From assembly GCA_976226885.1 (NCBI GenBank), contig OZ320315.1, positions 97,030,001 to 97,094,000 of the forward strand: DNA of 64,000 bases, in the 5' to 3' direction. Positions 5,910 through 50,699 of this stretch are shown here, piece after piece (the stretch's first letter is position 1; every line of letters begins with the position of its first letter). This stretch comes from Iphione sp. A-MEVVRFRX5 (Eukaryota). The translations under genes and the position numbers were made by a program. The notes beneath the pieces are model-generated. The model was not told the DNA's origin and made no database searches. It saw only the letters and a program-made list of their open reading frames with translations.

Positions 5910-7804
5910 TTCTTACATTACTAATGCCATTACATTACATTATGCCATTGACCTGGCACCATTCACTTAACTTCTCAATATCCTGTTGTAAGGTTTGTCT
6001 GATGATTAACGGGTCTTTGTTCCTAATACACAGCACAATGTCATCTGCATACATTGTGCACTCAGATCCTGTGTAGTGTTTGATACTATCGTTAATGAAA
6101 AGATTAAACATCATTGGACCTCAGAGGTAGTTTATGCAAAATACATCCATTAATTTTTGTATAAATTTTTCTATGAGACAAATACGACTTAAGCCACTGT
6201 TCTATTTTTTTAAAACCCATTTAGGACAATATGATGGTTTATTGTATTGAATGCTTTACTGAAATCTATGAAGTGCCCCAACCAGATCCTCTCACTTTAA
6301 TGCCTCATGTATAAAGATTAATAGGTCATTAACTGCAGTCTGTGTTGATTTTTCTTTCTGAAACCCAAATTGTTTTTGTGAGATTAGATTGTTACAGGAT
6401 ATATAGTCACTCATCTGATCGAATACTATTCTTTCTAGAATTTTAGCAACCATTGGCAATATTGAAATCGGTCTGTAGTTCGTAACTCCATCTCTCCTTC
6501 CCTTGCCTTTATAAATCGGCGTAATGAGTGCTTCAGTCCATTCATAAGGGACTATCTGTTTTTGTAAACTATTGAGTAATACTGTAAATTGTTCCCACCT
6601 TTGCATCCAATTGCTTTAATATAAGATCTTCAACTTGTGTTTCTTGAACCATTCTAAAGCTAAAGTCATCATTAGTTGTTGGTACCCAGATAAGATTCAT
6701 TGGATTTTCTTCATGTGCTTGGGTATTTCCAATCTTTGCAAAGAAATTGTTTAATATGTTCGGTACCACTTCTGCATTTGATGCACCTTTGATGTTGATT
6801 GTAGGTGTTTTTCTTGTTTTACCCGTTAACTGCCAATATTTTCTCGGATTCTACTGTGAGTAGTAGTTGGATACACCATTTTGAATTGATCTCTTGACAG
6901 TTACAGCAACTCTCCTAGCATTTGCCAGCAAACAACTGATTCTTTTCTGCAATTTGCTTTCTGGTACATTTACTTATTTGTGTTAGCTCTATGCGTTTCG
7001 GCTGACTTTTCTTAAAAGGATAATTATCTTCAAGGAAAATCTGAATAATTCTCTTCATAAACAACCACTGATAATCTGGATCTTCAAATATTTCATACCC
7101 ACCCCAGTCTAAATGTTTGACATAATGAGTAAAATTGTCATGTGATATATTATTCCATTTTCTATAATTGAAAGATCTTATGTCCACATTAATTCTTCTT
7201 CTTTGTATGATAGTCAAAACCTCATAGTGATCACTTAGAAAAGTTTTGTTTACTCTGCTTGCTCCCTTTACCCTGTGATAAAGGAATACCAGATCTATAC
7301 AACTTCTAGTCTGCAGAGTACATCGTGTAGGGGTTTGGACGAGATCAATTTGTGGTTTTGTCATAAAGTTGTTTATCGAGTGTATTTATATTGAAGTCAT
7401 CTAACAGGCATATGCAATTATCTAGTTGACGGATCACCTCCATATGTTCATCTAGAGTCGTAATAAAGTCTACCACATTTCCCTTTGGAGGTCTATTTAA
7501 GCAGCATAATGCTAAGTTGGGCCTATCCTTTTGCTGTACTTCTAACCATATCAGTTCCATGTTGCTATAAGAAATCAGATATTTACTATTATCAAAGGTT
7601 ATTATTGATAAGCTTTCTTTATAAAAAAATATTAGTCCACCTCCCCTTTTCTTGCTTCTATCTAGGCGTATAATTAAACAGTTGGGTATATCTATTGTGG
7701 CAGTCAAGATGCTATCATTTAACCATGTTTATATCAGGATTAATCTGTTCTATGCATGTTTTTAGTTCCAACCATTTGGGCAAAAGACTCCGTATGTTCA
7801 GCAT
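5910..7804 (-). mobile_element. Decayed CR1/L2-like LINE ORF2 (APE + RT)
   Basis: APE motifs MLNIRSLLPK (about 7800), RLDRSKKRGGG, DDFNIN, SCIDLVF and SDH; RT motifs NYRPISILP, QFGFQK and YADD (about 6045). Confidence 0.9.
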
Positions 7805-8375
7805 CAAAGTTCAAAGTTCAAAGTTCTTTATTTCACATCTCTTTGTATCGAGTAGCACTGAATACATGGAGATCTTCCAGCAAAATGTATAATAGCTGAG
7901 TACTCGTTGTCATTACAATGTTACTTCCGAACAAACAATCCAATTTATAATTACTTCAACAATCCAACTTATAATCAAGATCAACTAATAGGCACACACA
8001 CACGGGTAACACAGGGCTTAATACAACTATAATTAGACAGACCATGTGTCAGACTGCATGTCCAGTACATTGTTTTTTCTTCACCTACTTATTTACACAT
8101 GATTAAGATCATTTCAACACATAAGTAACAGAATAGATTAGGTACAGATAATGCAAATGATTTCACAAAGAGAGACTGTCTCGGTCTTTGCAGCTCTGCT
8201 ACTCCAAACACACTTCTTCTGGTTGCCATTTTACTCCCCCTGGATACCTTGTTCAACCTAAGCATTCTATGCACTAGTAGTACTAACTGCTCCCTTCCTC
8301 TTACTTCAAAGGATTGTAAGCCTGCTTTCCATCTCAGGGACAGGGAAGACTCCCTGCATCTAGTCATTCCCACTT

Positions 8376-10809
8376 TCAAGGCTGTTTTTTTTTTATTTGG
8401 AGCTGGTCAACCATACTTTTGCTAGTCGATACAAACAGAGGTAGGCCATAGTCAATAGCCGGCAACACAAACGATTTGAACATTCTAACCCTGTCCACAA
8501 AGGGAAGTAGTTTCACAAGACGTGATAATACATAGGATCTCTGCCTTACTCGTTTTCTCATGTTTTCTACAAGTGGTTTCCAAGTTAACTTAGTGTCAAT
8601 CAGATACCCTAGAAAGTTAAATTGATCCACCTTACTGATTTTCACAGTTTCTTGATGCAAGTCCAGATCAAACTGACCTGCTCTACCAAATATCATATAA
8701 CAAGACTTCTTGTCATTAAGAACCAGTCCATGCACCTTTACCCAGTTGCTTACATCCTTTATACCCCTCTGTAATTTCAAACGTAGCGCCATGGCATTGC
8801 TTGCTTCCCCATAGATAGTTAAGTCATCCGCATATAAAATACTCTTGGTGATTACCTGGGCTCCCACAACTGGATTGATTACCATAGTGAACATTAGTGG
8901 GCCCATTAGGCTGCCCTGGGGTACCCCTTGTTTCACATGCAGCAGGGATGAGTTATATCCGTTACAGCGCACATATTGTTTACGATTATGAAGATAGAGG
9001 CCCATCTGATACAGATCTCACCCGCCCCCGCAACTCTCAGACTGTGTAATACTAAGTCATGGTTTATTATGTCAAAGGCTTTGGACATATCAAAATAGAC
9101 TGCACCAGTATATTTACCCATATCATTTGCCTCATAAACTCCCTTAAGAAGCTCCGCTACCGCTGTTCCAGTACTTCTCCCAGCACGAAAGCCGTGTTGG
9201 GCTTCTGTGAAATAACCTATACTTTCAAGCTTGTTCACTATCTGTTGATGCACTACCTTCTCCACTATTTTCCCAATCAGTGGGAGAATTGCCACTGGCC
9301 GATAATTCGCTTTGCTTGTCCGTGGCCCCTTCTTGTGTATTGGTACTATGCGTGCGACTTTCCAGTCCAATGGCACAGTACCAGTCAAGACCAGTTCATT
9401 CACAATCGTTACAACATGATCTAAAGAGATCAACAGAGTCTTTGAAGACCCTGGTAGGCAGGTCTGCCATGCCACTGGGTTTTTTGATGTTTATTGCCTC
9501 AATTATTTCTCTGAGCTGACTTGGTGATACAGGCTTCAAATCCCAGGTGGCAGCACTATCGACAAAATCAGTCTGAATTGGTCGAGCTAGCTGTTCTGCT
9601 TGTTCAACAAAATAACTATTTAAAACCTCTGCTACATTTGCCTCGTCTATGTCCTCATCTCCTTCCTTAAGTAATATATTCGATTGTTTTAACTTATCCC
9701 TTCTAAGGACGCAATTGATTGTTTGCCAGTATTCCTTTTGCATTTTGCATTTTCTAAGCTGCTCTTGGAAAAACTTTTTCTTTGCTTTTATCACCAACCG
9801 GCTTACCATCGATTTATAAAATTTAGAGATTCTTAAGTCATCCTCATTTGATGTCCTTTTATACTCCTTTAAAAAATGATCCCTGTTTTTCTGGCCTCGC
9901 TTATTTCTTTGGTCATCCACTCACTTCCTAGTCTTACTTTTCTGGCTACCTTAGGACACAGTTTTTCCACCGCATTTACCATGCCCGACTCCAGGACTTT
10001 CCACCTATCTTCTGGTTCATTATCCTTTTTGTCAACTAATATCTGGAGGCAATCTTCTAACTCATCCCCAAGTTTCCACCTATCATAGTCTTTCCATGCT
10101 CTTCCCATTCTAACCTCTGATTTCTTCTTCTCACATGCCTTTTTATTTACAATATACACCGGTTGATGATCACTCACATGAATGTCAAGAGTTCCTTTCA
10201 TACTGATGTCACTAAGGTTGGTGCAGACTAGATCCAGGATGGATCTACTCCATCAATGGATTATTGTCGGACCATCTATTACCTGAGTTAGCTTGTAACG
10301 GTCAAATATATCTTCTAGCAGTTGCCGCTTTCTATCTTGTCTGCTCCAGTCAGTGTTTAAGTCACCTCCTATAATTATATCAGGGTTGCGATCTCTCACT
10401 ATTCTCTTCAAGTTAACATCTAGATGCTCAGCTAAAATAGTATGCCTACCTGTGGGGGGCTGTAGATCGATCCCACATACAGAGATTTCTTGTAACTTGA
10501 TTTTATTTTTACCCACATGCTTTCAACCTCATCTTTCATTGAGTTCAATTTTATTACCTCTTCTGCTACCACACTTTTGCAGACATACGTGACCAATCCC
10601 CCTCCCCTTTCTTTGGATAATCCAGTCCTGTCTTGTCTGAATACATTGTAGCCATTAATATGTAACTGTTCATTTGGAATACTCGCCTTTAGCCACGTTT
10701 CACATATGCATAGTGCTAAAGGTTTTTCATTTACCATTAATTCAACAACTTCGGAAAATTTAGACATTAGACTTCTTATGTTCCAATAAATAACCGTTCT
10801 TCCCTTCAT
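8376..10809 (-). pseudogene. LINE ORF2 (APE endonuclease + reverse transcriptase), frameshifted
   Basis: WNIRSL, ETWL, RQDR..RGGG, GDLN, SDHQP, NYRPVAILP, QHGFR, DMSKAFD, GVPQGSLMGPLMF, YADD, FLGYLID. Confidence 0.95.
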
Positions 10810-10949
10810 GACTCTCCGTTTTTGTTCTTTCCAATTTTTATTTCACATATTAATCAGTTACAATTTGCTCACGATATAGATGTCTGTATAGAATACACCC
10901 ATCCACAGTAACATGCCATGTAGTTATTCGTTTAGCAGAAGCTATTATG

Positions 10950-11558
10950 AGTGCTGGTATCAAATAGATCACCGGCTGTCAATACAGGAATGTACGACGA
11001 ATGAAATCGACTCTCTCCCTCCCAATTTCCAGTTACATGTGGAGCCATGTTGATATTATCTACCAACAAGTCGGTTCTGAAAACCGAATGACCATACCAA
11101 TTTTCATGGATTCACCAGGATGTTTCTGGTGTGTCCAATCCATTTAGAGAATTCATATCATAGCAAAGGTTATTGAACTTTTCGATCTGTGAACATAACT
11201 CAGTTTGGCAGTACACACATGGAGGGTTGAATAATTTGGCATATGTTGGCAGAAACACCACATATGAGCTCGCACCTGTTCTGAGGCCGTTACAAATAGC
11301 ATTCATTTTATTCCACAAAACATCCGACATGGACCAACAAGAGTCAAATATTATATCGTCGACTTGACCACCCACTCGTACCAATGAGTGCAGTCCCATA
11401 TGTATCAGGGCCACATTGTAGTCCGGATCCTGATATTGGTCCAGGTGATCCACGATATATTCAAGCCTGCGATCAGTTAGCACAACTGATTCCCAGTCAT
11501 ACGAAGCATACACACGGCTGTACACTCCGTGACCCAACTGCAGTCCACGAACATTCAA
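10950..11558 (-). pseudogene. ORF-X: SGNH-hydrolase-like protein between ORF1 and ORF2
   Basis: YNVALIHMGLHSL...VVFLP...PETSW*IHE...GHSVFR. Homologous segments occur at 23.6, 37.1 and 41.9 kb. Confidence 0.6.
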
Positions 11559-11733
11559 AACTAGTTCACCTAGGCAAGAATATTTTATAAATTAAAAGAC
11601 CAGCATCAGTATATTTTGCAACTCAATTCATCATTAGAATGATAAATGCTGACTCATTTCTGGTACATGTATGATATTACTTATACAGTTACATACTGTT
11701 TGCATAATTCGCATAGCATTTTACCGTTCTGAT

Positions 11734-13218
11734 TTATGCGCCAATATGATTACCTTCCATTGTTGCATTGTCATATAGTCTCGATCCACTGCACAGAAAG
11801 CGATCAATACCACATTCAATGATTTCCTTTGAACCTGTGCCTATCAACACGGCTTTTAACACTGAATGCGCCTCAAATTTTGCTCTATGCACCTCATATA
11901 GCATTTGAAGCTCCCTTCTCGCCCATTCATTGGTTCGTTCAATTGAATTACCCAGTTGACGTGCCCTCATTGGGTTACTTTCATTTTTTATTTTGATGGA
12001 CAACCCCTTTTCATTACAACTTATGGCCTTTTGTGATTGAAACGCGTGCTCAACTGAGCAGTACTCCTCCCCATATACAGTAATCTCAGCTGGGTACAGA
12101 CTTGATAGAGGACAGTGCATACCCCTTATTGCCACCATAGCCTCCGTCTCCCTAGTGTTTGCACTCTCAAGCGTGAGGTCGTAGGGCAGTTTATCAATGT
12201 CGGCTGGCTTGTAGCTAATTCCCTCGACAATCAATGTTAGCCCACGTACACCGGCCCTTAGACCTCGTCGTCTCGCCTCTCTGGCTAGACAATGAAGGTC
12301 TTGATGGGTAGACTTGCCCTTCTTTGGTATATCCTCGTGAATGAAGATATAAGAATATTCATCCAAAGAATATTTATCCAAATCCTTCAGTTCAAACCTT
12401 TTAGAATACACTTTGTTCCTGACGACGACTGAATTGAAAGTGACAAGAACCACCGTGTCATAGCCATCTTGGCGTTGACCGAGGCGCTCAACACCATAGA
12501 TATCAGTGTCCCCCCACCTTGAATCAAGTGCATACAATATGTCTGACACCAATTCCCATTCATCAATTTCCTCCCGGTCTGGTATACCATGAAATGATAA
12601 ATTCCAGTGTCTGTTGTAGACATCTGCTAATAAGAGCTCTGAGTTAGCTCCATCGTCTGGTTCAGTCACATCAGTTACAACTTGACCTTTCCCTTCAGTT
12701 GCTGACTTTTCTTCTAGACTTGCCACTCTCCCCTCCAGACTTGCCACTCGTTCGTTAGCTTCCTTTAGAAGTTTAATTAGCTCAATGTTTTTCACTAGCT
12801 TTGCAATCATGCCATCTTGAACTTGGCACCTTTCCTCGCTTTCCTTACGCAGAGCCTGGAGCTCCTTTAGTATGTTCTCCTCATTTACAAGGATAGAACC
12901 AAGTCTCTTACTATGGTCAGTCCAGTGACTCATGTCCTGATTACCATCATCAGCGTTAGGCTCAAGAGTGTCCTGTGGTTTCTCCCGGGGGTCCCCTGTA
13001 TGGGGGCCAGCAGGAGCTGGCGATAATCCAGTGCTAACCCCGGTCTCATCGAGCGCGTCTTTTCCTTTGTCTGCAACGTCTTCAGTATCACTTGTTTCCG
13101 AGGACGAGCTGCTCAGTACAGTAAAGCTTTTACTTCTTCTAGTACACCGCAGGTTCACAAAGGTATTTTGCTCATGTTTCACACCACTTTTGGCTTTTTT
13201 CGTCTTTGTTCGAACCAT
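11734..13218 (-). CDS. LINE ORF1: acidic/basic N-terminus, coiled coil, L1-like RRM region, C-terminal NADAR domain
   Basis: 494-aa ORF with a heptad region (LKEANERVASLEGRVASLEEK) and NLSFHGIPD...ERLG...VLVTF...IFIHEDIP. The NADAR part reads LSSL...YCSVEHAFQSQKA...ARQLGN...W...AKF...L..TG..EIIEC..D, and its last motif (NQNGKMLCEL) lies beyond a frameshift. Confidence 0.8.
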   Translation of the reverse strand: MVRTKTKKAKSGVKHEQNTFVNLRCTRRSKSFTVLSSSSSETSDTEDVADKGKDALDETGVSTGLSPAPAGPHTGDPREKPQDTLEPNADDGNQDMSHWTDHSKRLGSILVNEENILKELQALRKESEERCQVQDGMIAKLVKNIELIKLLKEANERVASLEGRVASLEEKSATEGKGQVVTDVTEPDDGANSELLLADVYNRHWNLSFHGIPDREEIDEWELVSDILYALDSRWGDTDIYGVERLGQRQDGYDTVVLVTFNSVVVRNKVYSKRFELKDLDKYSLDEYSYIFIHEDIPKKGKSTHQDLHCLAREARRRGLRAGVRGLTLIVEGISYKPADIDKLPYDLTLESANTRETEAMVAIRGMHCPLSSLYPAEITVYGEEYCSVEHAFQSQKAISCNEKGLSIKIKNESNPMRARQLGNSIERTNEWARRELQMLYEVHRAKFEAHSVLKAVLIGTGSKEIIECGIDRFLCSGSRLYDNATMEGNHIGA

Positions 13219-13309
13219 TTTTCAGTGATTTTCCACTCAGCACTCGGTGCGCACGTCCTACCACCATGACGGTTAGAAAACAATCATGATGGATAGTTCA
13301 TCTATATTG

Positions 13310-16417: not shown

Positions 16418-16744
16418 AGCAAAATCTAGTTTATAACCAGAAACGGCCTGAATAACATCAGTATCCGAGGTAAGACGTTGCTACAGTGTCCTATATTGAC
16501 AAAGGCACCCAGCTTGGAATTGAGGTTTTACTTCCTCACCTGAGAAGGGGCTGTCAGCTGCTTGGACGGGGTGGCCTGGACCATCATCAGGGGCTGGGGT
16601 TGGTTTGCTTGAGATTGTTGCTGTTGTGGTTGATTCACTTGAAACAAGGGATACTGGGTATAGGGAGTATTCTGATAGTTGAACCTCCTCTTGTTGTTCC
16701 CTCTGTAATTTGGGTAATATCTTCCCCTGCCTCTGCCTCGGGGG

Positions 16745-17870
16745 ATTTTGTGTGAACTTACTTCGGTTTATCTCTGTTAACACCAATAGGCATTGTTGTT
16801 TCCAACAGTCCGAGATTTCAATTGTATTCCCCAGGCGACGCACTGTCGTAGGACTGGTCTCTTTTGCGATTTCAGTTGCTGTCGTTTCTTTGTGTGTTAC
16901 CTTTGCCTTCTGGTACTGGTAGGCTTGTTCCGCTGAACTGAAGTTCTTCCCATTGTAGTGTACCATGCATTTGTAAAGGTTTTAAATGGTGACGTGCTCC
17001 CCCCTGAACGCCAGTGTTGTCATTGTGATACAAATTTGCTTCCTCGAGAGTTACAGCTGGTGGTAAATCCCCCTGAATTGCTCGGTGAGTACTCTACCCC
17101 ATCGATTGTTAGGCTAATCCCATGTTTTGTGATAGTTAGTAGATTCTTGTAATCTGCTAAATGACGTAGTGGTATGTCCTCTTGCAGAAAGATATTTTTA
17201 TATTTCCTTGATTTCATTAGGACAAATCTGGCATTGTATGCCACATCTCATGCCCATTTGCATTTAAAGGACAGACGCTCCTTGGTTTCTCGTTTCTCCT
17301 TCCTATCCTTCTTACAGTCGACACTTCGTCATCATCCAGTGCTTCATCAATTCGACTCATTATGTCCCCAACTTCATCAAACAGATTTTCATTCTCATTT
17401 TCAGGTAATCCACGCACTATAAGATTTCTGTCGTTCCAGTAACTCATCCGTTGTATTCTCAACATTGTTTTCAGCGAAATCCTCATTTGTTGTCTCTGGT
17501 ATTGTTTTTAGTATCTCAATCGATTCCTCCACTTTGTGCAGTTTCTTTTCGACTGCCCCTTCGAGCTTATCGAGTCCTTGCTGGTAGTTATCCTGTTGTC
17601 CGGATATCATTTTCTCCAGCCTGTCGAGCCTAATACACAGGTTGTCCAATGTTTCAAGTATTTTGTTTAGTATGGCGTCTACTGCATTTGCCTTTCCATG
17701 CTCAGTTACCTTGTCCTCAATGGCAGTTATTTTTCCCAGTAGAGCAGTTGAGTAGTCATGTTGATTTCTTACCAGTTGTAATATTTCTGTTGCGTCTTTA
17801 CTGTCCTGGGGTACCGTGCGTACCCCTTGAAATTCTTCACCGGCTGTGCCCCCTCCACTCCGGTCAAGGG
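16745..17870 (-). pseudogene. LINE ORF1 (coiled coil, RRM, N-terminal half of NADAR), decayed
   Basis: NLIVRGLPENENE...VRRIGR...PRSV; IFLQEDIP; YNGKNFSSAEQAYQYQKA...VRRLGN...W...SKFTQNP. Confidence 0.75.
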
Positions 17871-20649: not shown

Positions 20650-21416
20650 ATTGAATTGAATTGAATTGAAAATGCTTTATTCGCATCTCTGGTTACAAAA
20701 AGCAACATGAGGTCTTCCAGTGACATGATCAGTATTACAAAATAACAGACAAGAGAGGTAATTATAATAACTGAACAAGCAAATTAAGAGTAAGCAGTTA
20801 CAAACACAAAAATTAGCTGTACATTGTTTGCCACTTTAGTGATTCTGAGCATTCAAGAAGCGGTCCTTGCTGTTTCGAGTCAAAACGATGTTACATTGTA
20901 TATGAATTCACATCATTAATTGCACTACCATGCAATAAGAGGCGATGTCATCTTAATTTTCCTTTTAAATTTGGTGTAGTTGGACTGGTGTTAGACTGTT
21001 CCCTATTTTTACAGCCTGGTACCAACTGCTTTTCTTACACTTGGTCATGGTTGGCCTGTAGAGAGGAAGATTGGGGCCTAGACTTCTCCTCGTCCTCTTT
21101 CTAGAAACCTCAAAATTGCATAATTTCAAGTGAACCATTCTGTGAACCAGTAGGATACCCTGAGTCTTGCCTCTGTCTTCCAGACTCTTTAGTTTCAAGT
21201 CCCGCCGAAGGTTTTTGGCTGTTTTTATGGCCTTCCTTTTACAAAGCACTACCCTCTTCAATAGATTATTGTATTCAATTTGCAGGTTAGACATTAATCC
21301 ACCACTGGCGGCAGCCAAATGGCATAGACCATATTTGAATATGGGATCAATGAATGATTTGAAGATTTTTACTCTTTAAACTGAAGTAAACATGTTAATT
21401 TAGAAATACCGAAGGA

Positions 21417-23090
21417 TCATTGTCTCGCCACAGTCCTGATGTGTTTGGCCTGGGCAGTCCACTTAAGATCAGAGTCAAGCCTGAAGCCTAAGAAATTCGA
21501 AACATCATTTTTATGTAGGGTCTGGCCATTGAGCTGTAAGTCAAGATCTAAATTTGGTCCATGACCGAAGACCATGTAGTTGCTTTTGGACGGATTTATC
21601 ACCAGTCCTACTGATTTACACCATCGGGACACATCAGTCAGGCCTCTCTGTAATTTTAGCCTCAAGGTCATTAGGTTAGTTGCGGACACATACACGATGA
21701 TGTCGTCCGCATACATGATGACCTTAGTAATAGCCATATGAAGTGGCAGGGAGTTCATAACCACGGAGAACAGGAGGGGACCTAAGTGGCTGCCTTGAGG
21801 CACCCCCTGGTCAACTGGCAAAACGGTAGAGTCACTACTATTGCATCTTACGAATTGACACCTACCTTTCAGATATGATACAATCCAGCTTGTCGTACGC
21901 ATGGACATGTTAAGCCTACTGAGACATTTAACAAGAAGATCGTGATTAATTATGTCAAAGGCTGATGTAAGGTCAAGAAAGACAGTACCAAAGTGGTTAT
22001 GTCTATTTAACGATTCATAGCATTCCTTCATTAGTTGATCGACCGCTGTGGATGTACCTCTGTGCGGTCTGAACCCGTGCTGCTCCCGTGTTAGTAGAGA
22101 CGATCGTTCTAGATATTCAGACATCTTACGTTGGACATGCCATTCGACTAACTTTCCCATACCATGTATGATTGAAACCGGATGATAATTTTCCTTCGAT
22201 TCTGCTGGCTTCTTTTTAAGGATTGGTCTAACACGTGATGTTTTCCAACACTGGAGAAAGTTGGCACTTAGAATGGAGACATTGATTATTGTTAAGATCA
22301 GCAGTAGGTTAGTCAGTATAGTGTCCTGAAACACTCTCATCGGTACTTGCATGATACCACTAGGTTTCCTATCACTCAGCCTTCTCACTGCCACACGTAG
22401 ATCTTCTGCCCTCATGGTAGGTATGTGCCACCCCATGCGATTCCCTGCAATTTGCTCGGAGACGATTGAAGACTTCGCCGAGTTTGCTATGTTACTTGCT
22501 TTGCTAGTGAACCACTCATTCAGACGTGTCGCAACGTTGTTGCCTGTTATCTGTTCCCCATTATCAACAAGATTAATGGGTTTTTCAACATGTTTTCCTT
22601 TTCCTATGTCAGCATTTATCACATCCCAGTATTCCCTAGCATTAGAACACCTATCTAGCTTTTCTTTATAGTAGTTGCGTTTTGCATTTTTTACAAGATT
22701 TTTTACCATCTGTCGATAGAATTTCCCTATCCTGTATGCGTCTAAGTCACCGTCTTTACGATGCTTGTTGAAGAAATAGTTTCGGTTTTTGATCGCTTCA
22801 ATGATTGCAGGGGTAACCCATTCATTTTGTTTTCTAACTTTGTACCTTTTAATTGGGCATAGATCAACAGCACCTGCACGCATTACCTCCTCAACTGTTT
22901 CCCATACTTGGTCAATGTTTTCATTCGATACTACAGGAAGATCTTGGATCACAGGAAGAACATGATCCCTTAACGCCAATCTGCTGTAATTTCGATAGGA
23001 CCTTGCTTCATATTCTAGTGTGCAATATTTTTGACGACCCTTCTTGTTTCTCAGGAAAACCGGGTGGTGGTCACTGGCAGCATTACTCAT
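21417..23090 (-). CDS. LINE reverse transcriptase (long open remnant)
   Basis: 557-aa ORF with QHGFRP, DLTSAFD, GVPQGSHLGPLLF, YADD, FLGFRLD. Confidence 0.9.
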   Translation of the reverse strand: MSNAASDHHPVFLRNKKGRQKYCTLEYEARSYRNYSRLALRDHVLPVIQDLPVVSNENIDQVWETVEEVMRAGAVDLCPIKRYKVRKQNEWVTPAIIEAIKNRNYFFNKHRKDGDLDAYRIGKFYRQMVKNLVKNAKRNYYKEKLDRCSNAREYWDVINADIGKGKHVEKPINLVDNGEQITGNNVATRLNEWFTSKASNIANSAKSSIVSEQIAGNRMGWHIPTMRAEDLRVAVRRLSDRKPSGIMQVPMRVFQDTILTNLLLILTIINVSILSANFLQCWKTSRVRPILKKKPAESKENYHPVSIIHGMGKLVEWHVQRKMSEYLERSSLLTREQHGFRPHRGTSTAVDQLMKECYESLNRHNHFGTVFLDLTSAFDIINHDLLVKCLSRLNMSMRTTSWIVSYLKGRCQFVRCNSSDSTVLPVDQGVPQGSHLGPLLFSVVMNSLPLHMAITKVIMYADDIIVYVSATNLMTLRLKLQRGLTDVSRWCKSVGLVINPSKSNYMVFGHGPNLDLDLQLNGQTLHKNDVSNFLGFRLDSDLKWTAQAKHIRTVARQ

Positions 23091-24299
23091 TATACCTGAC
23101 TCAGCTATAAAACGCGTTTTGTGAACATTAGATCAATGCAAGATTTTGATGTCTTATGGATTAGTGTTTGAGCTGTGATGTACTGTCGCATGCCATATAG
23201 TTTAATACAGTGATCGATTTCAACCTTTCCCGTTGAGTCACTAAGCCAATTAATATTGAAATCCCCAGCAACAATTATGTCAATGCCCTTCCCTACAGAC
23301 TGTAAGCAAGTGTTTAAATAATCACGAAGAATATTGATGTTAACTGGTGGTATGCAATAGCAACAGCAGAACAATAGCGGTTTCCTGTTATTACACCTTA
23401 ACTCAAGCCACATGGCTTCAATGTGTTCTGTTTGTATGTCCAAGTTAGTAACCCTACGACTACCGGATTGTCCTGGACTGTCATTGATATTATCTCATGC
23501 AGTTTGGGGAATAGACTTCTTATGTTCCAGGTAACAAAAGTACGGCCCTTCGTTGATATCATGATTGGAGCAGTGTTTATTGCCAAAAAGTAAGAGATAG
23601 TTCTCTAGATTATAGGATAAGTGATAGGTAATCCCCTACGTTGCAGGCCCAGTTGTAAATGACGTGGTGGTTGCTGAAGTCGCCTGAGTCCAATTTTTCT
23701 GGCCAGAAGATCACCATGGAGTCCACGAATTTGTGAACTGGCCAAGACGTTTCTGGAGTAGACAAGCTGGCCATTAGATTCATCTCTTTCACCGCTAGGT
23801 TGTAGTGCAGGATCTGAGCATTCAGCAGAGACTGCTCAGCCGATCCCGCCCCATTCAGTAACACACCGTGTATTGGTAGAAACAGAACCCTCTGTCCTAT
23901 AACATTGACGAAGTGTTCTGATATTGCTGATAGATGGGTCATCACGGTCAGGTCCGGGTCCTCATCCTCATCCTCTCTCAGCATCCAACGCTCCTCATCG
24001 GTCGTGACAAAAGAGTGTAGTCCCAGTCTTAGCACTGTAAGACTGAATGGCCCAGCCCCCACTGAAGCGATGTTTTCTGCAACTTCTCGGAGCGTTACAC
24101 CAGTGTAGACGTGAGTAGATATGAAGAATCTCGTAAGTAACCCTCTTGAATGTGATAGGCCAGCTCAGCTCCGGTCTCATCAGTCAGAAAACGTACAGTG
24201 TGATTCATACCTGTGAGGTTCCAACAGAGAGCAGTTTTCAACGAACAGTCTTACCAGTCACAAGATTAATTGTTGTCTAGCAGGCAGCCCACTTTATCT

Positions 24300-24903
24300 A
24301 CACAGTTCATCCCTCAAGCGCATAAGAGCTATGCCTACTTTGTTATTGCCGTGATGATCACTACCATAGTCACATGATTCCCATAGATTTGTCCCCGAGC
24401 CTATTTCAGTGTCATAGGTTGATTCAACCAGATAGTTTGTCGCTTCGTTGCAAGTAGTCAATTAGGCTCAGATTCTGTTTGAACTTACTTTCGGTGATGT
24501 CTTGCAAGATTCGCTGACTTTTCTCCTCCCAGTCATCACTCGGTGTCACGGTATTTCTAAGGTGCCTGATCCTGGTAGGGTTATGTTCAGTGATTATTTC
24601 TTCTGCCAGCTTACTTGCATGTGCCGACAGGGCCTTCTGGTGCTGGTACGCTTGTTCCGCGGAACTGTAAGTCGTGTCCTGGTATTTTACTTGACATTTG
24701 AATAGATTTGAAATAGACACGTGTTCACCCCTGAACGAGAGTGTATGGTTGTTGTGGGAGCTGTTTGCTTCCTCCAACGACAATTCGGCCGGTAGTTCGC
24801 TCAGATTGTCATGGGTGTATGTAACGCCATCCACTAATACCTTAATCCCTCTGACACCTGCTCGATGTCCGAACTCACGTGCATGGCATGCTACTGTTTG
24901 CAA
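24300..24903 (-). pseudogene. ORF1 C-terminus with NADAR domain (one frameshift)
   Basis: SFRGEHVSISNL...YSSAEQAYQHQKA...W...SKFKQN. After the frameshift the manual translation reads VESTYDTEIGSG...HGNNKVGIALMRLRDEL. Confidence 0.8.
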
Positions 24904-24924
24904 ATCTGCAAATGTTGTGGAATA

Positions 24925-27660
24925 TTTTTTTTTAAATCTTTATTTATGCTGGTAAATGTACATTTCAAAATGTGTTGCTCCAGCACATTACAATTTTTTC
25001 AAAACATTAAACATTTAAATGGAATGTAATGCGATGTAATAAACTACTGTACAAAATTATGTGACTGATGGTGAAAATGATGGGGACTCCAACAAAATCT
25101 TACTGATACAGAGCTGAGATTTACACACAAAACAAACTATCCTCAGTTTGAAAAATCTTTTACATCATCATTTACCAACCTATCGTTACCACATACCTTT
25201 GAAGTATTTACTATACAGGAAAGAATGAAGAAAAATGAAAAGAGTAGAGTAGCAGCGGCATTGCCACATGCTGATCTCCCTCCAAAATAAGTAGTAGTAT
25301 AATGCTTATTTTGTGAAGAGGGGTAGCCATAGAAAAAACACCAGTTATATTGTATTGTCTGTAAGGCCGCGGCATTGCCACTAACCATCTCTCTCCATAA
25401 ATACCCGTTCAAGTTTATGGTACTTTAGCATCCCACACCCAACGTCGTCCATATCTCTGTAAAAAGCCCTTCCTACTTTTAATATTCAGATTTGCCTCTG
25501 TTACCCCTATATTTTGCCAAAGTAGGTAACAAGTATATTCTAGTGATCTACGATACGACTCCCTTTTGGGTCGCATAACTTGTACTTGTTTCTTTTGGGC
25601 TAGTCTTGTTTTACCTCCTTCATCCGGAGTTTGCGCAACCTTATAACCAATCCGTAATAAAGCACGGTTTCTCCTTGTCCGAAAATCATTTGCTACCTCA
25701 TCCTTGCTTAACTTTTTATATCCATAGGCTATATTTATTGCCACTTTCCTTGTCCTAATTACTTTTATAGCACCTCTTGTGTTTAGCTGAGTATTCGTAC
25801 TTATCGCATACTCTGAAATCGGTAGAATCATCGACTGTGTTAGACGTACTGCTATCTCACTATTCATGTACCTACGGATACTCCTCATGTAACTTATCCT
25901 TGCCTACATCTTTTTACACATCATGGTCTGATTTTCATACATGCTAAGAAACTCATCCAGCAAAATTCCAAGGTATTTTACCACACGTACAAATTTCAAC
26001 CCAGTGTCCCTTGTTATTTCACTTTTTAAGACTTCATCCTCCTTTCCTATTCTATTGTGAAATAGTACGCAGCATGTCTTCTCCTGGTTTACCTGTATAC
26101 GCATATGATCCGACCATGACAAAACTTCATTCAATGACTTCCTGACCTTTAATGCTATTTCATCTTTTGAACCTGCCTTCACTACTATCGCGACATCATC
26201 CGTGTATATAACTAATTTGCCCGTTGTGATTTTCTGGGCAAGAGAGTTAATAAAAATTATAAAGAAAAGTGGCCTGAGAATTGAGCCCTGCGGTACACCG
26301 CATCTGATTGTTTTTGTACTTGAACTAATACCATTGCAACAAAGAAATTGCTCTCTATTACACAGATAATTTTCGACCGAGGCATAATTTTTCCCTGTGA
26401 TGCCTGAATTTAATAAGACTTGTTTTAACCTTGTGTGATTTACAGAATCGAAAGCTTTTCGGAAATCTATGAAGATACCCACAACCCTTTGCCCCTCGTT
26501 TATTCCCCTATGTATTTCATTAGTTAGATCATAAATTGCCATATCTGTAGAATGCCCTTTTCTAAAACCATATTGTGATTTTACGAAGAACTCATTTGTT
26601 TCAAGATAGGTGTATATCTTCCAGTGAACTATCCTCTCCATGACCTTTGCCGGGAGCGGTAAAAGACTAATTGGCCTGTAATTTTCAACGTTATATACAT
26701 CACTTGATTTGGGTATTGGTACAACCTTGCTCCTTTTCCAGTCGTTTGGTATTTCCCCTTGTTGAAAAGTTTTATTTATCAATTTCGTCAGTAGACTTAC
26801 ATTCTTCCTAAAAAAAGCTCTGACTACTAAGGTTGGTACATCTGATATCAAAGAGGCCTTACTATTTTTAAAACTATTTATGGCCCAGAGAACCTCTTTG
26901 TCATTAGTACTAAAGTCAGGGATCAAAAGTCCAGCATCATCTTTCAGCCAGTGTTCATCATCCACCATCCCTAGCTTACTCTGTATTTTACTTCCAATAC
27001 TCACAAAGAACTGATTCAGTTCTTCCGGAACATCCCCAGGCTGTAAAGTTTCACCTTCTCTCTTAATTACCACATTACTATTTTCCTTTACATTTCCGAG
27101 TCCAAAACTTTTTTTAATAAACCCCCAATATTTACCACTATCATTTGACAACTCTGCGGCCTTACTTGTTATATACCGCCTCTTAGCAGTCTTAATCTTA
27201 TACTGTATTTGTTTACAAATTACTTTAAAAGCTAACCAATCTTCCACCCTTCCTGTATTCTTTGCTAGACTGTATATCTTCCCCCGCCTCCTAATTTCCT
27301 GCAAAATTTCTTCTGTCATCCATGGTTTTATAAGCCGTTTAACAACTCGCTTTTTTAAGGGAATCAAATTATCAAGCACACATGTCATAATACATCTCAC
27401 CCGCTCCCAATACAAATTTATTCCATAGTTTTCATTTACCGTTGCAACTATTTTGGTCGCCATATCAATAAAGGCGTTCTCATTTAGTTTCTTAAAGTTT
27501 CTCACAAACCTCGTTTCCAAATGTCGGATACACTCCCTGCCCCTTATAACACATACAAGGGCATCATGATCAGAGAAATCACAATCATAGACTACCCAGT
27601 CAAACTGCGAGTCACTAACACATCTATTATAATCCAGTAGGCCGCTCGGGGTGTGTGTCG
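24925..27660 (-). mobile_element. LINE (RT and APE end) with poly(A) tail, abutting ORF1 of copy 3
   Basis: RT ORF 25904..27520 (NYRPISLLP, QYGFRK, DFRKAFD, GVPQGSIL, YTDD, YLGILLD). The minus strand reads AATAAAGATTT(A)9 at about 24925-24945. Confidence 0.85.
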
Positions 27661-33993: not shown

Positions 33994-34362
33994 GGTTCAA
34001 GTTTCAAGTTTCTTTATTTCACATCTCTTTGCATCAGGCAGTGCCGAATACATGGAGCTCTTCCAGTGAAATGCCCGGGGCAGATACACAAAAGCATTTT
34101 ATTGAGCATTTCACCGACATTTGAGTAATTCTTATAATAAAACATGATTTCTTTTTAATAGTTACAATTACAGCAAGGATAGATAGTAGCAGTAACCTGC
34201 TTATTTAGAAAAACAATCCTTAATGGATAACAATTTTACAAGTACACACACATAAGTACATTTACCTCAACCAATTTCAAATATAGATTCAAATCACCAT
34301 AGCATATTTCTTTCCACATCCATGATGTCAACTTCAGTAGTATATGCTAATCAATGCTGCCT

Positions 34363-35706
34363 CTATTTACCCAACATGTTTTTAAACTCTTTCATCGAGA
34401 GTTTACATTTGCTTGGATACTTGAGTTCATTCCACGCTCTTAACCCTTGGTACCAGAACGATTTCATATATAGTGATTGTTTTGGCCGTTTTGCATTGAT
34501 GGTGGATTTCCTGTTACCGATTCTCTGACATTCTGGACATAGCTGCTGTAATCTATGAATTAGAATCAGTAAGTTGCGCTTTCCTCTGTCTTCAATTGTT
34601 CCCAAATTTGCTAGCTTGCGTAGCTTTTGTAACTCATCAGTTAGAACCTTGCTAGCATTGAAATATAGTGATAGTCCATAGTCAATTACTGGAATAATGA
34701 AGGCCTTCAGAACCCTGATTCTGTCCTGTAGGGGCAACAGGACACTGACCTTCGATAGTACATACGATCTGTGTCTTAACTTTTTAACTGTCTGTTCCAA
34801 CATCGGTTCCCAACTTAGTTTTTCATCAATCATGTGGCCCAAGAGGTTGAAACTATTTACCTTTGTAATCTTAGAGCCATTGTGGACCAAGTCCAAATCG
34901 AATGAGGCAGTACGACCAAATAACATGTAACATGACTTCTTTTCATTCAATGTTAGACCATTCTTTTGTGTCCATTCTGCTACATCCTTTATACCACGTT
35001 GGGCTTTTAGACGTAATGCCATTGCATTGCTCGCCTCACAGTAAACAGTCACGTCATCTGCATACATTATACACTTGTTAATGACCTGACAGGATGGTAG
35101 CGAATTAATTACTAAGGTGAACATAAGGGGGCCCATTAGGTTTCCTTGTGGTACCCCTTGGCGCATTGTTAACAGTTCAGAGTCATGCCCATTACAGCGT
35201 ACAAATTGTTTCCTTTCCCGTAGGTATTCCTTTGTCCAACTGATACATTTCTCACCAGCACCTGTCTTTTTTAGGCAATTCAACACTAGATTATGACTTA
35301 TTATGTCAAAAGCCTTTGACATATCAAAGAATATTCCTGCAGTGAATTTGTTATTGTCATTGGCCAGGTATACCTCCCTTAATAGCTTTGCTACCGCTGT
35401 CATGGTACTCCTACCCGGTCTGAACCCATGCTGTTCCTCACAGTAGAACTCCTTCTTTTCTAGGTTTTCAACTACTTGTCTACGAATCACCTTTTCCACA
35501 ATTTTTCCCATTAGAGGTAGTATTGCTACAGGTCTGTAATTGGCTTTATCATTTCTACTGCCCTTTTTGTGGATAGGCACTATCCTGGCCACCTTCCATT
35601 GATCTAATACAACTCCCCCTACCAACATTTCATTTACCAAATTCGTAATTTCTTCCATCGCTATCAACAGACAATCTTTCATGATTTTAGATACCATCAA
35701 CACCAC
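34363..35706 (-). CDS. LINE reverse transcriptase
   Basis: 447-aa ORF with NYRPVAILP, QHGFRP, DMSKAFD, GVPQG, YADD. Confidence 0.9.
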   Translation of the reverse strand: MVLMVSKIMKDCLLIAMEEITNLVNEMLVGGVVLDQWKVARIVPIHKKGSRNDKANYRPVAILPLMGKIVEKVIRRQVVENLEKKEFYCEEQHGFRPGRSTMTAVAKLLREVYLANDNNKFTAGIFFDMSKAFDIISHNLVLNCLKKTGAGEKCISWTKEYLRERKQFVRCNGHDSELLTMRQGVPQGNLMGPLMFTLVINSLPSCQVINKCIMYADDVTVYCEASNAMALRLKAQRGIKDVAEWTQKNGLTLNEKKSCYMLFGRTASFDLDLVHNGSKITKVNSFNLLGHMIDEKLSWEPMLEQTVKKLRHRSYVLSKVSVLLPLQDRIRVLKAFIIPVIDYGLSLYFNASKVLTDELQKLRKLANLGTIEDRGKRNLLILIHRLQQLCPECQRIGNRKSTINAKRPKQSLYMKSFWYQGLRAWNELKYPSKCKLSMKEFKNMLGK

Positions 35707-37778: not shown

Positions 37779-37913
37779 TATATTTATGTCTCAAGAGTGT
37801 CATATTGATATCATTGGCTACGTCGATTTAATACAACAACACTTCACAGAATCTTCCCTCAAGATCAACTTATTAATCGGTACCTTTTTGACTCCACTCT
37901 TTACTCATCCGTT

Positions 37914-39950: not shown

Positions 39951-40079
39951 CAAGGGGAGTTCTTTCTGGACACGAGTTGCAGAGCAAACAGAGAGTATAG
40001 CTCAAATGAGGAACAATGAGTCTATGTGACGTAAGCAGATCTGTATTTTGCATATATTATAAGCTGAAACACACATAGT

Positions 40080-49289: not shown

Positions 49290-49353
49290 GACAGGTACTC
49301 ACCCTTACAATGTGGTGTAGAGACAGGTACTCACCCTTACAATGTGGTGTAGA
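49290..49353. repeat. 32-bp perfect tandem duplication
   Basis: gacaggtactcacccttacaatgtggtgtaga x2. Confidence 0.95.
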
Positions 49354-50690: not shown

Positions 50691-50699
50691 AACTTGGCA

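What the first reader, a model, noticed from the sequence alone, without database searches (positions are those of the whole stretch)
7805..13284. LINE family whose ORF1 carries a NADAR (ADP-ribose-base hydrolase-like) domain: candidate retrotransposon counter-defence module
Seen in sequence: a 494-aa ORF1 with coiled coil and L1-like RRM region ends in a NADAR-like domain (LSSL / SVEHAFQSQK / RQLGN / W / AKF / TG..EIIEC..D / GxNxxG). It is followed by an SGNH-like ORF and an APE-RT ORF2 with a normal tailed 3' end. Established: known accessory ORF1 domains of CR1/L2/Jockey-group LINEs include RRM, CCHC, PHD, esterase and L1-like modules. NADAR proteins include E. coli YbiA (an N-glycosidase) and the antitoxins that remove ADP-ribose from guanine modified by DarT1. 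Guanine-specific DNA ADP-ribosyltransferases exist in animals (pierisins, clam CARP-1). Inference: the LINE RNP may carry an eraser for ADP-ribosylation of its RNA, cDNA or target DNA, much as viruses use macrodomains. I know of no description of NADAR as a LINE ORF1 domain, but I could not search for one.
Basis: partly seen in the sequence, partly recalled or inferred. Interest (0 to 1): 0.92.

Follow-up and report, generated by a model that had tools for sequence, protein, structure and literature searches.

The report
Dead LINE copy with NADAR-tipped ORF1
This is a decayed copy of a three-gene jumping element (LINE) whose RNA-packaging protein ends in a real, evolutionarily conserved NADAR enzyme domain, of the kind that strips ADP-ribose off DNA and RNA bases. 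The fusion is old and widespread, it was mentioned once in a 2025 paper, and its function has not been tested.

Summary
Window 11734..13218(-) is a 494-aa ORF1 whose C-terminus matches Pfam NADAR (E 5.7e-16, above the curated cut-off). It is followed by an SGNH-fold ORF, APE-RT remnants and a tailed 3' end.

This copy is dead. A frameshift removes the last NADAR helix, the middle ORF is truncated, and ORF2 lies in seven pieces.

Intact sister copies in the same 1.18-Gb genome share a three-ORF layout:
- ORF1 (~500-550 aa): coiled coil, RNA-binding-like core, full NADAR.
- Middle ORF (~200 aa): SGNH fold.
- ORF2 (~925-950 aa): APE and RT.

The NADAR domain folds like E. coli YbiA and Phytophthora NADAR (TM 0.78). 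It keeps the catalytic Glu/Lys/Glu in nearly all copies and is as constrained as the ORF1 core. At least 83 public protein clusters carry the same fusion.

In this genome the middle ORF lacks the esterase Ser/His, so it is a pseudo-esterase.

The novelty claim is weakened. PMC12477816 (2025) already notes NADAR in oyster 'Tx1' LINE ORF1s, and this scan has met the fusion on other DNA of this genome.

The counter-defence idea is plausible but untested; I found no host DarT- or pierisin-type ART. The clade (CR1/L2-like or Tx1) is unresolved.

The parts
13219..13284 (-). Presumed 5' UTR. The 5' boundary is not verified.
Evidence: No TSD was found. No close copy aligns upstream of ORF1.
11734..13218 (-). 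ORF1, 494 aa, cut short at the C-terminus. It has a basic/acidic N-terminus, a coiled coil (about aa 105-175), an RNA-binding-like core (about aa 190-359) and a NADAR domain (aa 360-494).
   Evidence: Coiled-coil matches. A marginal match to the human L1 ORF1p coiled-coil/RRM junction was obtained with a sister copy (E 0.0075).
11737..12141 (-). NADAR (YbiA-type) domain of ORF1. The catalytic Glu (SVEHA), Lys (QSQK) and Glu (IIEC) are present. The last helix is missing from this frame.
   Evidence: Pfam PF08719 E 5.7e-16. Alignment to 2B3W and 8BAU through a sister copy. Family alignment. Model pLDDT 95 and Foldseek TM 0.78.
11684..11734 (-). Frameshifted remainder of the NADAR domain (last helix, '...NGKMLCE...') in the -1 frame.
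   Evidence: Translations in three frames, compared with intact copies.
11013..11555 (-). Middle-ORF remnant (SGNH-fold pseudo-esterase). It lies in two pieces, and the start codon and first ~20 residues are missing.
   Evidence: Profile matches at 11115-11555 (159 bits) and 11013-11111 (28 bits). Family alignment. Fold. Catalytic positions.
8134..10812 (-). ORF2 remnants: APE endonuclease (about 10120-10812) and reverse transcriptase (about 8391-9440), in seven frame pieces.
   Evidence: Pfam Exo_endo_phos and RVT_1 on the pieces. Profile of intact ORF2s.
7830..7886 (-). Conserved 3'-UTR terminal hairpin. It is shared at 75-93% identity by families whose ORFs are only ~65% alike.
   Evidence: There are 16 predicted pairs, mostly invariant, with 2 compensatory changes. 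The single-sequence z-score is only -0.98.
7827..7832 (-). AATAAA polyadenylation-type signal.
   Evidence: Read directly from the sequence. Invariant in 8 aligned 3' ends.
7804..7826 (-). 3' microsatellite tail, (GAACTTT) x 3.3.
   Evidence: Sister families end in (GAAACTT)n, (GAATCTTT)n or (GACTCTTT)n.

Best explanation
Window 7804..~13284(-) is an old, inactivated copy of a three-ORF non-LTR retrotransposon. It belongs to a large and deeply diversified lineage in this animal genome.

In intact members the three genes are:
- ORF1p, a multimerising, nucleic-acid-coating protein (coiled coil plus an L1-ORF1p-like core) whose C-terminus is a compact YbiA-type NADAR domain.
- A second gene that encodes an SGNH-fold protein. 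In this genome it has lost the esterase triad.
- ORF2p, which supplies the APE endonuclease and the reverse transcriptase.

Shown here:
- the domain identities;
- the conserved gene order;
- retention of the NADAR catalytic Glu/Lys/Glu;
- purifying selection on the NADAR domain as strong as on the ORF1 core;
- the same fusion in many unrelated public assemblies.

Inferred: the NADAR domain is an active N-glycosidic hydrolase carried on the LINE ribonucleoprotein. It acts in cis on the RNA, cDNA or target DNA that ORF1p coats. Its most likely activity is removal of ADP-ribose from bases (guanine N2, possibly cytosine). That is the only nucleic-acid activity known for NADARs, including YbiA itself. 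This would keep the template and the new cDNA readable.

Whether the ADP-ribose mark is placed by a host restriction enzyme (true counter-defence) or arises some other way is not known.
For: NADAR identity:
- Pfam 59.6 bits in the window copy and 84 bits (profile 10-161 of 163) in intact copies.
- The AlphaFold model has pLDDT 95.2. Foldseek gives TM 0.78 and E 1.4e-8 to E. coli YbiA (2B3W) and to the P. nicotianae NADAR-ADPr complex (8BAU).

Catalytic residues (numbering and mutagenesis from PMC11543638):
- The E43, K50 and E125 equivalents are present in 18/18, 18/18 and 16/18 copies of this genome.
- They are present in 82/83, 82/83 (K or R) and 82/83 ORF1-linked public representatives.

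Selection:
- NADAR dN equals that of the ORF1 core (0.10 vs 0.07, 0.21 vs 0.21, 0.19 vs 0.18). It is well below the N-terminus (0.2-0.6).
- In the one unsaturated pair, omega is 0.15.

Linkage and abundance:
- The order ORF1-NADAR, middle ORF, ORF2 appears in 12 fetched copies, 5 of them fully open.
- It appears three times within the window itself.
- There were 3965 first-look ORF1 candidates in the genome.
- 83 of the top 150 NADAR representatives carry the ORF1 core.
- ORF1-NADAR is followed by APE-RT in five loci from two other assemblies.

Biochemical precedent:
- All NADARs tested, including YbiA and phage gp30.3, reverse guanosine ADP-ribosylation on DNA (PMC11125620) and on RNA (PMC11833690).
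- Phages use orphan NADARs against DarT1 (PMC11825919, title and abstract).
Against: - No enzymatic, expression or mobility data exist. No sequencing run was listed for this stretch.
- R79 clamps the ADP-ribose pyrophosphate in 8BAU. Its equivalent is not conserved in ORF1-linked NADARs: N/S/G in this genome, and D most often elsewhere. The W133 equivalent is Leu in 15 of 18 copies of this genome. The substrate may therefore not be canonical ADP-ribose.
- No host DarT, ADPrib_exo_Tox or Enterotoxin_a-type ART was found. This is inconclusive.
- YbiA's first described activity is on riboflavin intermediates, not on nucleic acids.
- E. coli YbiA did not rescue DarT1 or YarT toxicity in cells (PMC11125620).
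- The window copy itself cannot make a complete NADAR domain.
Confidence: 0.4

Rival explanations
1. Counter-defence in the strict sense. The host, or a pathogen of it, ADP-ribosylates guanines of LINE RNA, cDNA or target DNA as a restriction. The ORF1p-borne NADAR erases the mark, as phage gp30.3 does against DarT1 and as viral macrodomains do against PARPs. This is a special case of the best explanation.
For: - Phage orphan NADARs do neutralise DarT1 (PMC11825919).
- NADARs reverse guanine ADP-ribosylation on both DNA and RNA.
- The domain has been kept by selection in a selfish element for a long time.
Against: - No DarT, ADPrib_exo_Tox or Enterotoxin_a-type ART was detected in this genome. 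The controls were silent, so this is weak evidence.
- No evidence exists anywhere that animals ADP-ribosylate TE nucleic acids.
- The domain is the plain YbiA type. It lacks the N-terminal extension and Lys that mark DarT1 antitoxins (PMC11543638).
Confidence: 0.2
2. The NADAR domain is an active hydrolase, but on another substrate. Candidates are an RNA-processing by-product, an NAD- or ADP-ribose-derived metabolite, or another N-glycoside. The authors of the 2025 paper loosely proposed 'processing the RNA intermediates'.
For: - The catalytic Glu/Lys/Glu are kept while the pyrophosphate clamp (R79 equivalent) is variable or acidic, and the W133 equivalent is Leu in this genome.
- YbiA was first characterised as an N-glycosidase of riboflavin intermediates; this is reflected in the TIGR02464 name.
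- The RNA-processing suggestion is in PMC12477816.
Against: - Fusion to a nucleic-acid-coating protein argues for a nucleic-acid substrate.
- Every NADAR assayed so far hydrolyses guanine-ADPr.
- NADARs are inactive on phosphate-end ADPr.
Confidence: 0.25
3. The domain is a non-catalytic module. It could be an ADP-ribose or nucleotide reader that steers the RNP (for example to PARP-marked DNA breaks), or a purely structural C-terminal cap of ORF1p.
For: - Some lineages have lost the last-strand Glu (L031 has Asp, L042 has Ala).
- Earlier notes of this scan report other copies with degenerate catalytic motifs. I did not check these.
- The companion SGNH ORF has itself become a pseudo-enzyme.
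Against: - The three catalytic residues are kept almost universally across more than 80 diverged ORF1-linked clusters. That is hard to explain without catalysis.
- By contrast, the multi-NADAR host-type proteins do show decay at these sites.
Confidence: 0.1
4. The NADAR part is a neutral passenger or an annotation artefact: a captured host exon with no role, or a chance ORF.
For: The window copy is dead and has no close relatives. The best DNA match is 83% over 1.5 kb.
Against: - The Pfam E-value is 5.7e-16 and the model is confident.
- Intact fusions occur in many families.
- dN/dS is well below 1.
- The same fusion occurs in other assemblies.
Confidence: 0.02

Closest known systems
ORF1 proteins of Crassostrea gigas 'Tx1' LINEs in Repbase, noted to contain YbiA-family NADAR domains (PMC12477816, Genome Biol 2025)
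   Same: A NADAR domain of the YbiA type sits on a LINE ORF1 protein of an invertebrate. The function is unknown, and the authors suggest processing of the RNA intermediate.
   Different: The paper gives one sentence and a supplementary alignment, with no architecture, selection or residue analysis.

The elements here have three ORFs with a separate SGNH-fold gene. Their ORF2 is compact (~925-950 aa) with no C-terminal CCHC, and they end in a microsatellite tail. From memory, these features fit CR1/L2-type elements better than Tx1.

I could not test whether they are the same clade, because I had no Repbase access.
Ectocarpus Gypsy LTR retrotransposons with a NADAR domain at the N-terminus of Pol (PMC12477816)
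   Same: A retroelement has recruited a YbiA-family NADAR domain.
   Different: It is an LTR element and the domain is on Pol, not on the RNA-packaging protein. The authors found its nearest relatives to be bacterial, so this looks like a separate acquisition.
SGNH esterase of CR1/RTEX/Penelope ORF1 proteins, e.g. zebrafish ZfL2-1 (PMC3905857)
   Same: It is an accessory SGNH-fold module encoded upstream of ORF2 in non-LTR elements. PAF-AH-like structures are among the fold matches.
   Different: There the esterase is a domain of ORF1p and keeps the Ser-Asp-His triad and its activity.

Here it is a separate ORF. In this genome the Ser position is E, Q, A, D, W or R, and the His position is H or Y in equal numbers.

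An external relative (L049) still reads TDSRG...DGIHP.
E. coli YbiA (2B3W) and Phytophthora nicotianae NADAR (8BAU)
   Same: The fold matches (TM 0.78). The catalytic E43, K50 and E125 equivalents and W89 are kept. It is a 'naked' YbiA core with no extension.
   Different: Sequence identity is 23-27%. The R79 equivalent is not conserved, and the W133 equivalent is Leu or Phe in this genome. The domain is fused to a LINE ORF1p.
DarT1-associated NADAR antitoxins and phage T4 gp30.3 orphan antitoxins (PMC11543638, PMC11825919)
   Same: The superfamily is the same. gp30.3 is a precedent for a mobile genetic element carrying a NADAR to undo base ADP-ribosylation.
   Different: Those proteins have Asp or His in place of the last-strand Glu and have N-terminal extensions. 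The structural match here is poor (TM 0.46 to 8BAT). No DarT was found in this genome.

Membership tests
NADAR superfamily (Pfam PF08719), YbiA subfamily | Sequence match above the curated Pfam threshold | tested here: met
   59.6 bits against a cut-off of 35.1 in the window copy. 84 bits over profile positions 10-161 of 163 in intact copies.
NADAR superfamily (Pfam PF08719), YbiA subfamily | YbiA fold: a helical core flanked by two small sheets | tested here: met
   The model has pLDDT 95.2. Foldseek gives E 1.4e-8 and TM 0.78 to 2B3W and 8BAU.
NADAR superfamily (Pfam PF08719), YbiA subfamily | Catalytic Glu and Lys (E43 and K50 of 8BAU; E88 and K95 of E. coli C7 NADAR) | tested here: met
   Present in the window copy (SVEHA, QSQK). 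Present in 18/18 copies of this genome and 82/83 public ORF1-linked representatives.
NADAR superfamily (Pfam PF08719), YbiA subfamily | Glutamate in the last strand (E125 of 8BAU), which defines the YbiA subfamily | tested here: met
   The window copy reads IIEC. 16/18 copies of this genome and 82/83 public representatives have Glu.
NADAR superfamily (Pfam PF08719), YbiA subfamily | ADP-ribose pyrophosphate contacts (R79 and W133 of 8BAU) | tested here: not met
   The R79 equivalent is N, S, G, A, E or K in this genome and mostly D or K elsewhere. The W133 equivalent is Leu in 15/18 copies here but Trp in 73/83 external fusions.
NADAR superfamily (Pfam PF08719), YbiA subfamily | Hydrolysis of base-linked ADP-ribose | not testable with these tools
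   This needs a biochemical assay.
DarT1-NADAR (BC4488-type) antitoxin | Asp instead of Glu in the last strand, an N-terminal fold extension, and a linked DarT1 toxin | tested here: not met
   The residue is Glu, not Asp. TM to G. lovleyi NADAR is 0.46. No PF14487 match was found in the genome, and the controls were silent.
L1-type ORF1p (coiled coil, RRM, CTD; Pfam Transposase_22) | Sequence or profile match to L1 ORF1p RRM/CTD | tested here: inconclusive
   - One sister copy hits human L1 ORF1p (2YKP) at E 0.0075 across the coiled-coil/RRM junction.
- The family profile finds only coiled-coil proteins in the PDB.
- There is no Pfam hit.
- ESM features score Baculo_FP_2nd at 0.92 and Transposase_22 at 0.89.
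SGNH/GDSL hydrolase (LINE esterase) | Flavodoxin-like SGNH fold | tested here: met
   The model has pLDDT 94.3. There are 85 PDB matches at E <= 0.001, with TM up to 0.76, including PAF-AH Ib.
SGNH/GDSL hydrolase (LINE esterase) | Block I Ser nucleophile and block V His | tested here: not met
   The Ser position is E12, Q2, A, D, W, R (no Ser). The His position is H8, Y8, A, D. The register is supported by the in-frame alignment DERG to DSRG with external L049, although that match is statistically weak (E 0.009). No Pfam SGNH family matches.
APE-type non-LTR retrotransposon | APE endonuclease plus reverse transcriptase in ORF2, and a 3' tail | tested here: met
   Intact copies match Exo_endo_phos, Exo_endo_phos_2 and RVT_1. 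Remnants are present in the window. The tail is read from the sequence.
APE-type non-LTR retrotransposon | Target-site duplication flanking the copy | tested here: not met
   Only a 9-bp match was found, and it is out of register. The copy is old.
CR1/L2-group versus L1/Tx1-group LINE | Placement in an RT phylogeny with reference elements | not testable with these tools
   No Repbase or reference RT set was available.

Indirect evidence:
- There is no conserved C-terminal Cys/His motif.
- ORF2 is ~925-950 aa.
- PF14529 matches.
- The element ends in a microsatellite tail.
- It has a companion SGNH gene.
- Two ORF2 relatives carry PHD fingers.

These lean towards CR1/L2, but that judgement rests on my memory of the clade features.

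The most novel reading that the evidence does not exclude
[quoted passage not shown] A very large, ancient lineage of LINEs survives it by carrying an active guanine- or cytosine-ADP-ribose hydrolase on the protein that coats its RNA and cDNA. This would be a eukaryotic parallel to phage NADARs that defeat DarT1.
Probability: 0.15. Interest if true: 0.9.

Novelty: new variant of a known kind. Interest (0 to 1): 0.6.

Why it matters
ORF1 proteins of LINEs are generally seen as nucleic-acid chaperones. The only enzymatic accessory described so far is the SGNH esterase.

This lineage has a second enzyme domain with three properties:
- It is kept under strong selection in hundreds to thousands of elements.
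- It belongs to the one hydrolase family known to remove ADP-ribose from guanine in DNA and RNA.
- Its biochemistry has been worked out only since 2023.

If the domain is active, it would point to base ADP-ribosylation (or a related N-glycosidic lesion) of retrotransposon nucleic acids in animals. No such biology is known there. It would also give a direct handle on the unexplained presence of NADARs in molluscs, cnidarians and other invertebrates, some of which may simply be LINE ORF1s.

The idea can be tested at the bench with existing substrates and assays.

The particular copy in this window is an inert fossil. The value lies in the family.

Tried and rejected
- Homology searches. Two word-indexed searches with ORF1, one whole and one on residues 215-525, returned nothing. 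That database evidently lacks close relatives in the allowed length range, so the result says nothing about absence. The ORF2 search gave 438 hits, but the source names were uninformative.
- Taxa of relatives. 29 of the 30 representatives looked up came from unnamed ENA, Logan or NCBI records. Only the abalone Haliotis rufescens protein was named.
- Host identity. It was not determined.
- Host ART genes. Searches with PF14487 (DarT), PF03496 and PF01375 found nothing, and the tool's control genomes were silent too. This is inconclusive.
- L1 ORF1p membership. The profile-versus-PDB search and the Pfam scan of 18 members were negative apart from coiled-coil matches. Atlas features gave leads only.
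- LINE clade. Atlas look-alikes of the RT were not discriminating, and the PDB holds only L1 and R2 structures.
- Target-site duplication. None was found.
- Expression. No sequencing run was listed.
- 3' hairpin. It is not significant on one sequence (z -0.98), and covariation is weak.
- Middle ORF in external loci. The middle-ORF profile found nothing in L045 and L046 and only a weak hit in L047.
- Further loci.

Full report
**1. What is in the window**

On the minus strand, 11734..13218 is an ATG-initiated ORF of 494 aa. Its residues 368-478 match Pfam NADAR (PF08719) at E 5.7e-16 and 59.6 bits, against a curated cut-off of 35.1. They also match NCBIfam TIGR02464 at 65.6 bits.

Downstream, in this order, lie:
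- a 148-aa ORF at 11112..11558;
- pieces matching Exo_endo_phos and RVT_1 at 8134..10812;
- a 3' UTR;
- AATAAA at 7827-7832;
- (GAACTTT)3 at 7804-7826.

- The NADAR match stops at profile position 132 of 163. The frame ends '...EGNHIGA*', while the last helix ('...NGKMLCE...') continues in the -1 frame at 11684-11734 (compared with intact copies).
- The middle ORF has lost its start and is broken near its C-terminus.
- ORF2 is split into seven pieces.
- No target-site duplication was found.
- The only DNA relative above 70% identity is an 83% match over 1.5 kb of ORF2.
- The 5' boundary at 13284 could not be checked.

**2. The family**

A six-frame search of the window's own genome (1.18 Gb, 89 contigs) with ORF1 gave 3965 first-look candidates. 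It gave 94 scored matches at 31-67% identity, most of them open frames of 490-570 aa.

I fetched longer stretches around fourteen of them. Twelve show the same order:
- ORF1 (~500-550 aa);
- a 60-190-nt spacer;
- a middle ORF (~200-214 aa);
- a spacer;
- ORF2 (~925-950 aa).

Five are fully open: L033, L035, L036, L037 and L042.

In intact copies the NADAR match is complete (profile 10-161 of 163, 84 bits). ORF2 carries Exo_endo_phos, Exo_endo_phos_2 and RVT_1.

The 64-kb window itself holds at least five further pieces of the lineage, all on the minus strand. Two of them (21.0-24.9 kb and 34.4-39.1 kb) repeat the three-gene order.

**3. The NADAR domain**

An alignment of 18 domains (A1) gave an AlphaFold model with pLDDT 95.2. 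Foldseek against the PDB finds only NADARs at significant scores:
- E. coli YbiA (2B3W) and the P. nicotianae NADAR-ADP-ribose complex (8BAU), both at E 1.4e-8 and TM 0.78;
- the DarT1-linked G. lovleyi NADAR (8BAT) at only TM 0.46.

It is therefore a plain YbiA-type core, not the antitoxin type.

I mapped residues through the HMMER alignment to 8BAU, using the residue roles given in PMC11543638.

| 8BAU residue | Copies in this genome | Public ORF1-linked representatives |
|---|---|---|
| E43 | 18/18 | 82/83 |
| K50 | 18/18 | 82/83 (K or R) |
| W89 | 18/18 | 82/83 |
| E125 (last strand; defines the YbiA subfamily) | 16/18 | 82/83 |
| D130 | 17/18 | 61/83 (10 more have Asn) |

The window copy has all of these residues.

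Two ADP-ribose phosphate contacts are not kept:
- The R79 equivalent is variable, and is often Asp in external fusions.
- The W133 equivalent is Leu in this genome's clade.

Pairwise Nei-Gojobori estimates show that NADAR dN tracks that of the ORF1 core (0.10 vs 0.07, 0.21 vs 0.21, 0.19 vs 0.18) and lies far below the N-terminal region (0.2-0.6). Synonymous sites are saturated in most pairs. In the single unsaturated pair, omega is 0.15 for NADAR. The domain is under purifying selection in the lineages that propagate.

**4. The middle ORF**

It has no Pfam match, but it is conserved (A2 and A3). Its model (pLDDT 94.3) has an SGNH/GDSL fold. There are 85 PDB matches at E <= 0.001, with TM up to 0.76, including PAF-acetylhydrolase Ib.

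The canonical catalytic positions are not kept:
- The residue after strand 1, at the helix N-terminus where 'GDS' carries the Ser, is E, Q, A, D, W or R.
- The block V His position is H in 8 copies and Y in 8.

An external relative (L049) has, between ORF1-NADAR and ORF2, an ORF that reads '...ITDSRG...YGG...DGIHP...'. It aligns in register with this genome's '...ISDERG...HLG...' (hhalign E 0.009, a weak match). This supports the mapping and suggests that this genome's version is a derived pseudo-esterase.

Known LINE esterases are domains of ORF1p and keep the triad (PMC3905857).

**5. The rest of ORF1**

The coiled coil is supported by repeated weak matches to coiled-coil families.

The 'L1-like RRM' is only marginally supported:
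- One sister copy matches human L1 ORF1p at E 0.0075 across the coiled-coil/RRM junction.
- The family profile does not retrieve L1 ORF1p from the PDB.
- Pfam is silent.
- Language-model features point to Baculo_FP_2nd (0.92) and Transposase_22 (0.89) clusters.

**6. Spread outside this genome**

A profile search of 1.84 billion representatives found 24045 NADAR proteins at E <= 0.001. Of the best 150, 83 also match my profile of the ORF1 core upstream of NADAR.

I examined five of these in two other assemblies (ENA ERZ25767047 and Logan ERR14368249). All are followed by an APE-RT ORF2.

In a tree of 209 NADAR domains, the 18 from this genome form one clade (SH-aLRT 97). ORF1-linked and multi-NADAR domains are interleaved on a weak backbone, so neither the number nor the direction of transfers can be stated.

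The only named relative is a Haliotis rufescens gene model with seven NADAR domains.

**7. Prior knowledge**

Full-text searches found one relevant paper, PMC12477816 (Genome Biol 2025). [quoted passage not shown] It also describes NADAR on the Pol of an Ectocarpus Gypsy lineage and suggests RNA processing as the role.

What exists, though, is one sentence without analysis. Notes of this scan also report the same fusion on other DNA of this genome. I treated them as leads and checked the shared claims myself.

**8. Clade**

I could not place the RT in a reference phylogeny.
- ORF2 is compact.
- It lacks any conserved C-terminal Cys/His motif.
- It ends in a conserved 'KSF-x-Y-x-G-x-K-x-WN-x-L' motif.
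- It matches PF14529.
- The elements end in 7-8-nt microsatellite tails preceded by a conserved hairpin.
- They carry an SGNH gene.
- Two ORF2 relatives have PHD fingers.

Whether the oyster 'Tx1' families are the same lineage is open.

**9. Mechanism**

Shown: a conserved, probably catalytically competent YbiA-type NADAR is tethered to the protein that coats LINE nucleic acids.

Established elsewhere:
- Every NADAR assayed, including YbiA and phage gp30.3, removes ADP-ribose from guanine in ssDNA (PMC11125620) and in RNA (PMC11833690).
- They do not remove it from phosphate ends.
- Phages use orphan NADARs against DarT1 (PMC11825919).

Inferred: on the LINE RNP the domain clears base-linked ADP-ribose, or a related N-glycosidic adduct, from the template RNA, the nascent cDNA or the target DNA.

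The stricter counter-defence reading needs a host enzyme that writes the mark. Searches for DarT, ADPrib_exo_Tox and Enterotoxin_a-type ARTs found none. The tool's controls did not ring either, so this is not evidence of absence.

The altered phosphate contacts leave room for a different substrate.

My odds:

| Reading | Odds |
|---|---|
| Nucleic-acid base de-ADP-ribosylation in cis | about 0.4 |
| ... of which true counter-defence | about 0.2 |
| Another substrate | about 0.25 |
| Non-catalytic role | about 0.1 |
| Passenger or artefact | about 0.02 |

**10. Verdict**

The feature is real and interesting at family level. The copy in the window is dead.

It is a new variant of a barely described kind: a three-gene LINE with NADAR-tipped ORF1p and a separate pseudo-SGNH gene.

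Noticed in passing
window 16742-17432, 20989-24924, 34372-39136, 40020-42201, 46869-47361 (all minus strand): There are at least five further fragments or copies of the same NADAR-LINE lineage in the window. Two of them keep the order ORF1-NADAR, middle ORF, ORF2. All lie on the same strand as the finding.
   Followed up: partly
window 5941-7728 (-): An older APE-RT LINE fragment of another family abuts the 3' end of the element. Further ORF2-only LINE pieces lie at 51-1340, 25499-27583 and 49228-52943.
   Followed up: no
window 7830-7886 (-); also window 33995-34073, L031:6548-6625, L034, L035, L036, L037, L032: The last ~80 nt of the 3' UTR are 75-93% identical between families whose ORFs are only ~65% alike, and more than 20 genomic loci match them. 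They can form a three-part hairpin that ends in AAUAAA, followed by a family-specific 7-8-nt microsatellite tail. This looks like a 3' recognition element for the reverse transcriptase. Covariation support is weak (2 compensatory pairs).
   Followed up: partly
P0001 (Haliotis rufescens XP_048255699.1, 4240 aa); also P0002, P0004, P0005: The highest-scoring relatives of the LINE NADAR profile are proteins with 3-7 tandem NADAR domains and no ORF1 core. In the abalone protein four of the seven repeats are identical. Many of these domains have lost catalytic residues. They could be host genes or mis-joined gene models.
   Followed up: partly
P0069 (3974 aa, on ~70-kb contigs; 13 cluster members): This is a giant protein with two NADAR domains and a weak match to the virion RNA polymerase domain of N4-like phages (PF21769, 23.6 bits, below the cut-off). 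It may be a phage protein, injected with the DNA, that carries NADAR.
   Followed up: no
L049:2691-3413 and L049:422-2509 (Logan ERR14368249); L048: This external clade is nearest to this genome's NADARs. Its ORF1 is longer (696-788 aa), and in L049 the middle ORF still has the canonical SGNH Ser and Asp-x-x-His motifs. L045 and L046 (ENA ERZ25767047) show no detectable middle ORF in the 700-900-nt gap.
   Followed up: partly
L031 (closest full relative of the window copy) and L042: The YbiA-defining last-strand Glu is replaced by Asp in L031 and by Ala in L042, in ORF1s that are otherwise open. Some lineages may therefore have changed or lost the activity.
   Followed up: no
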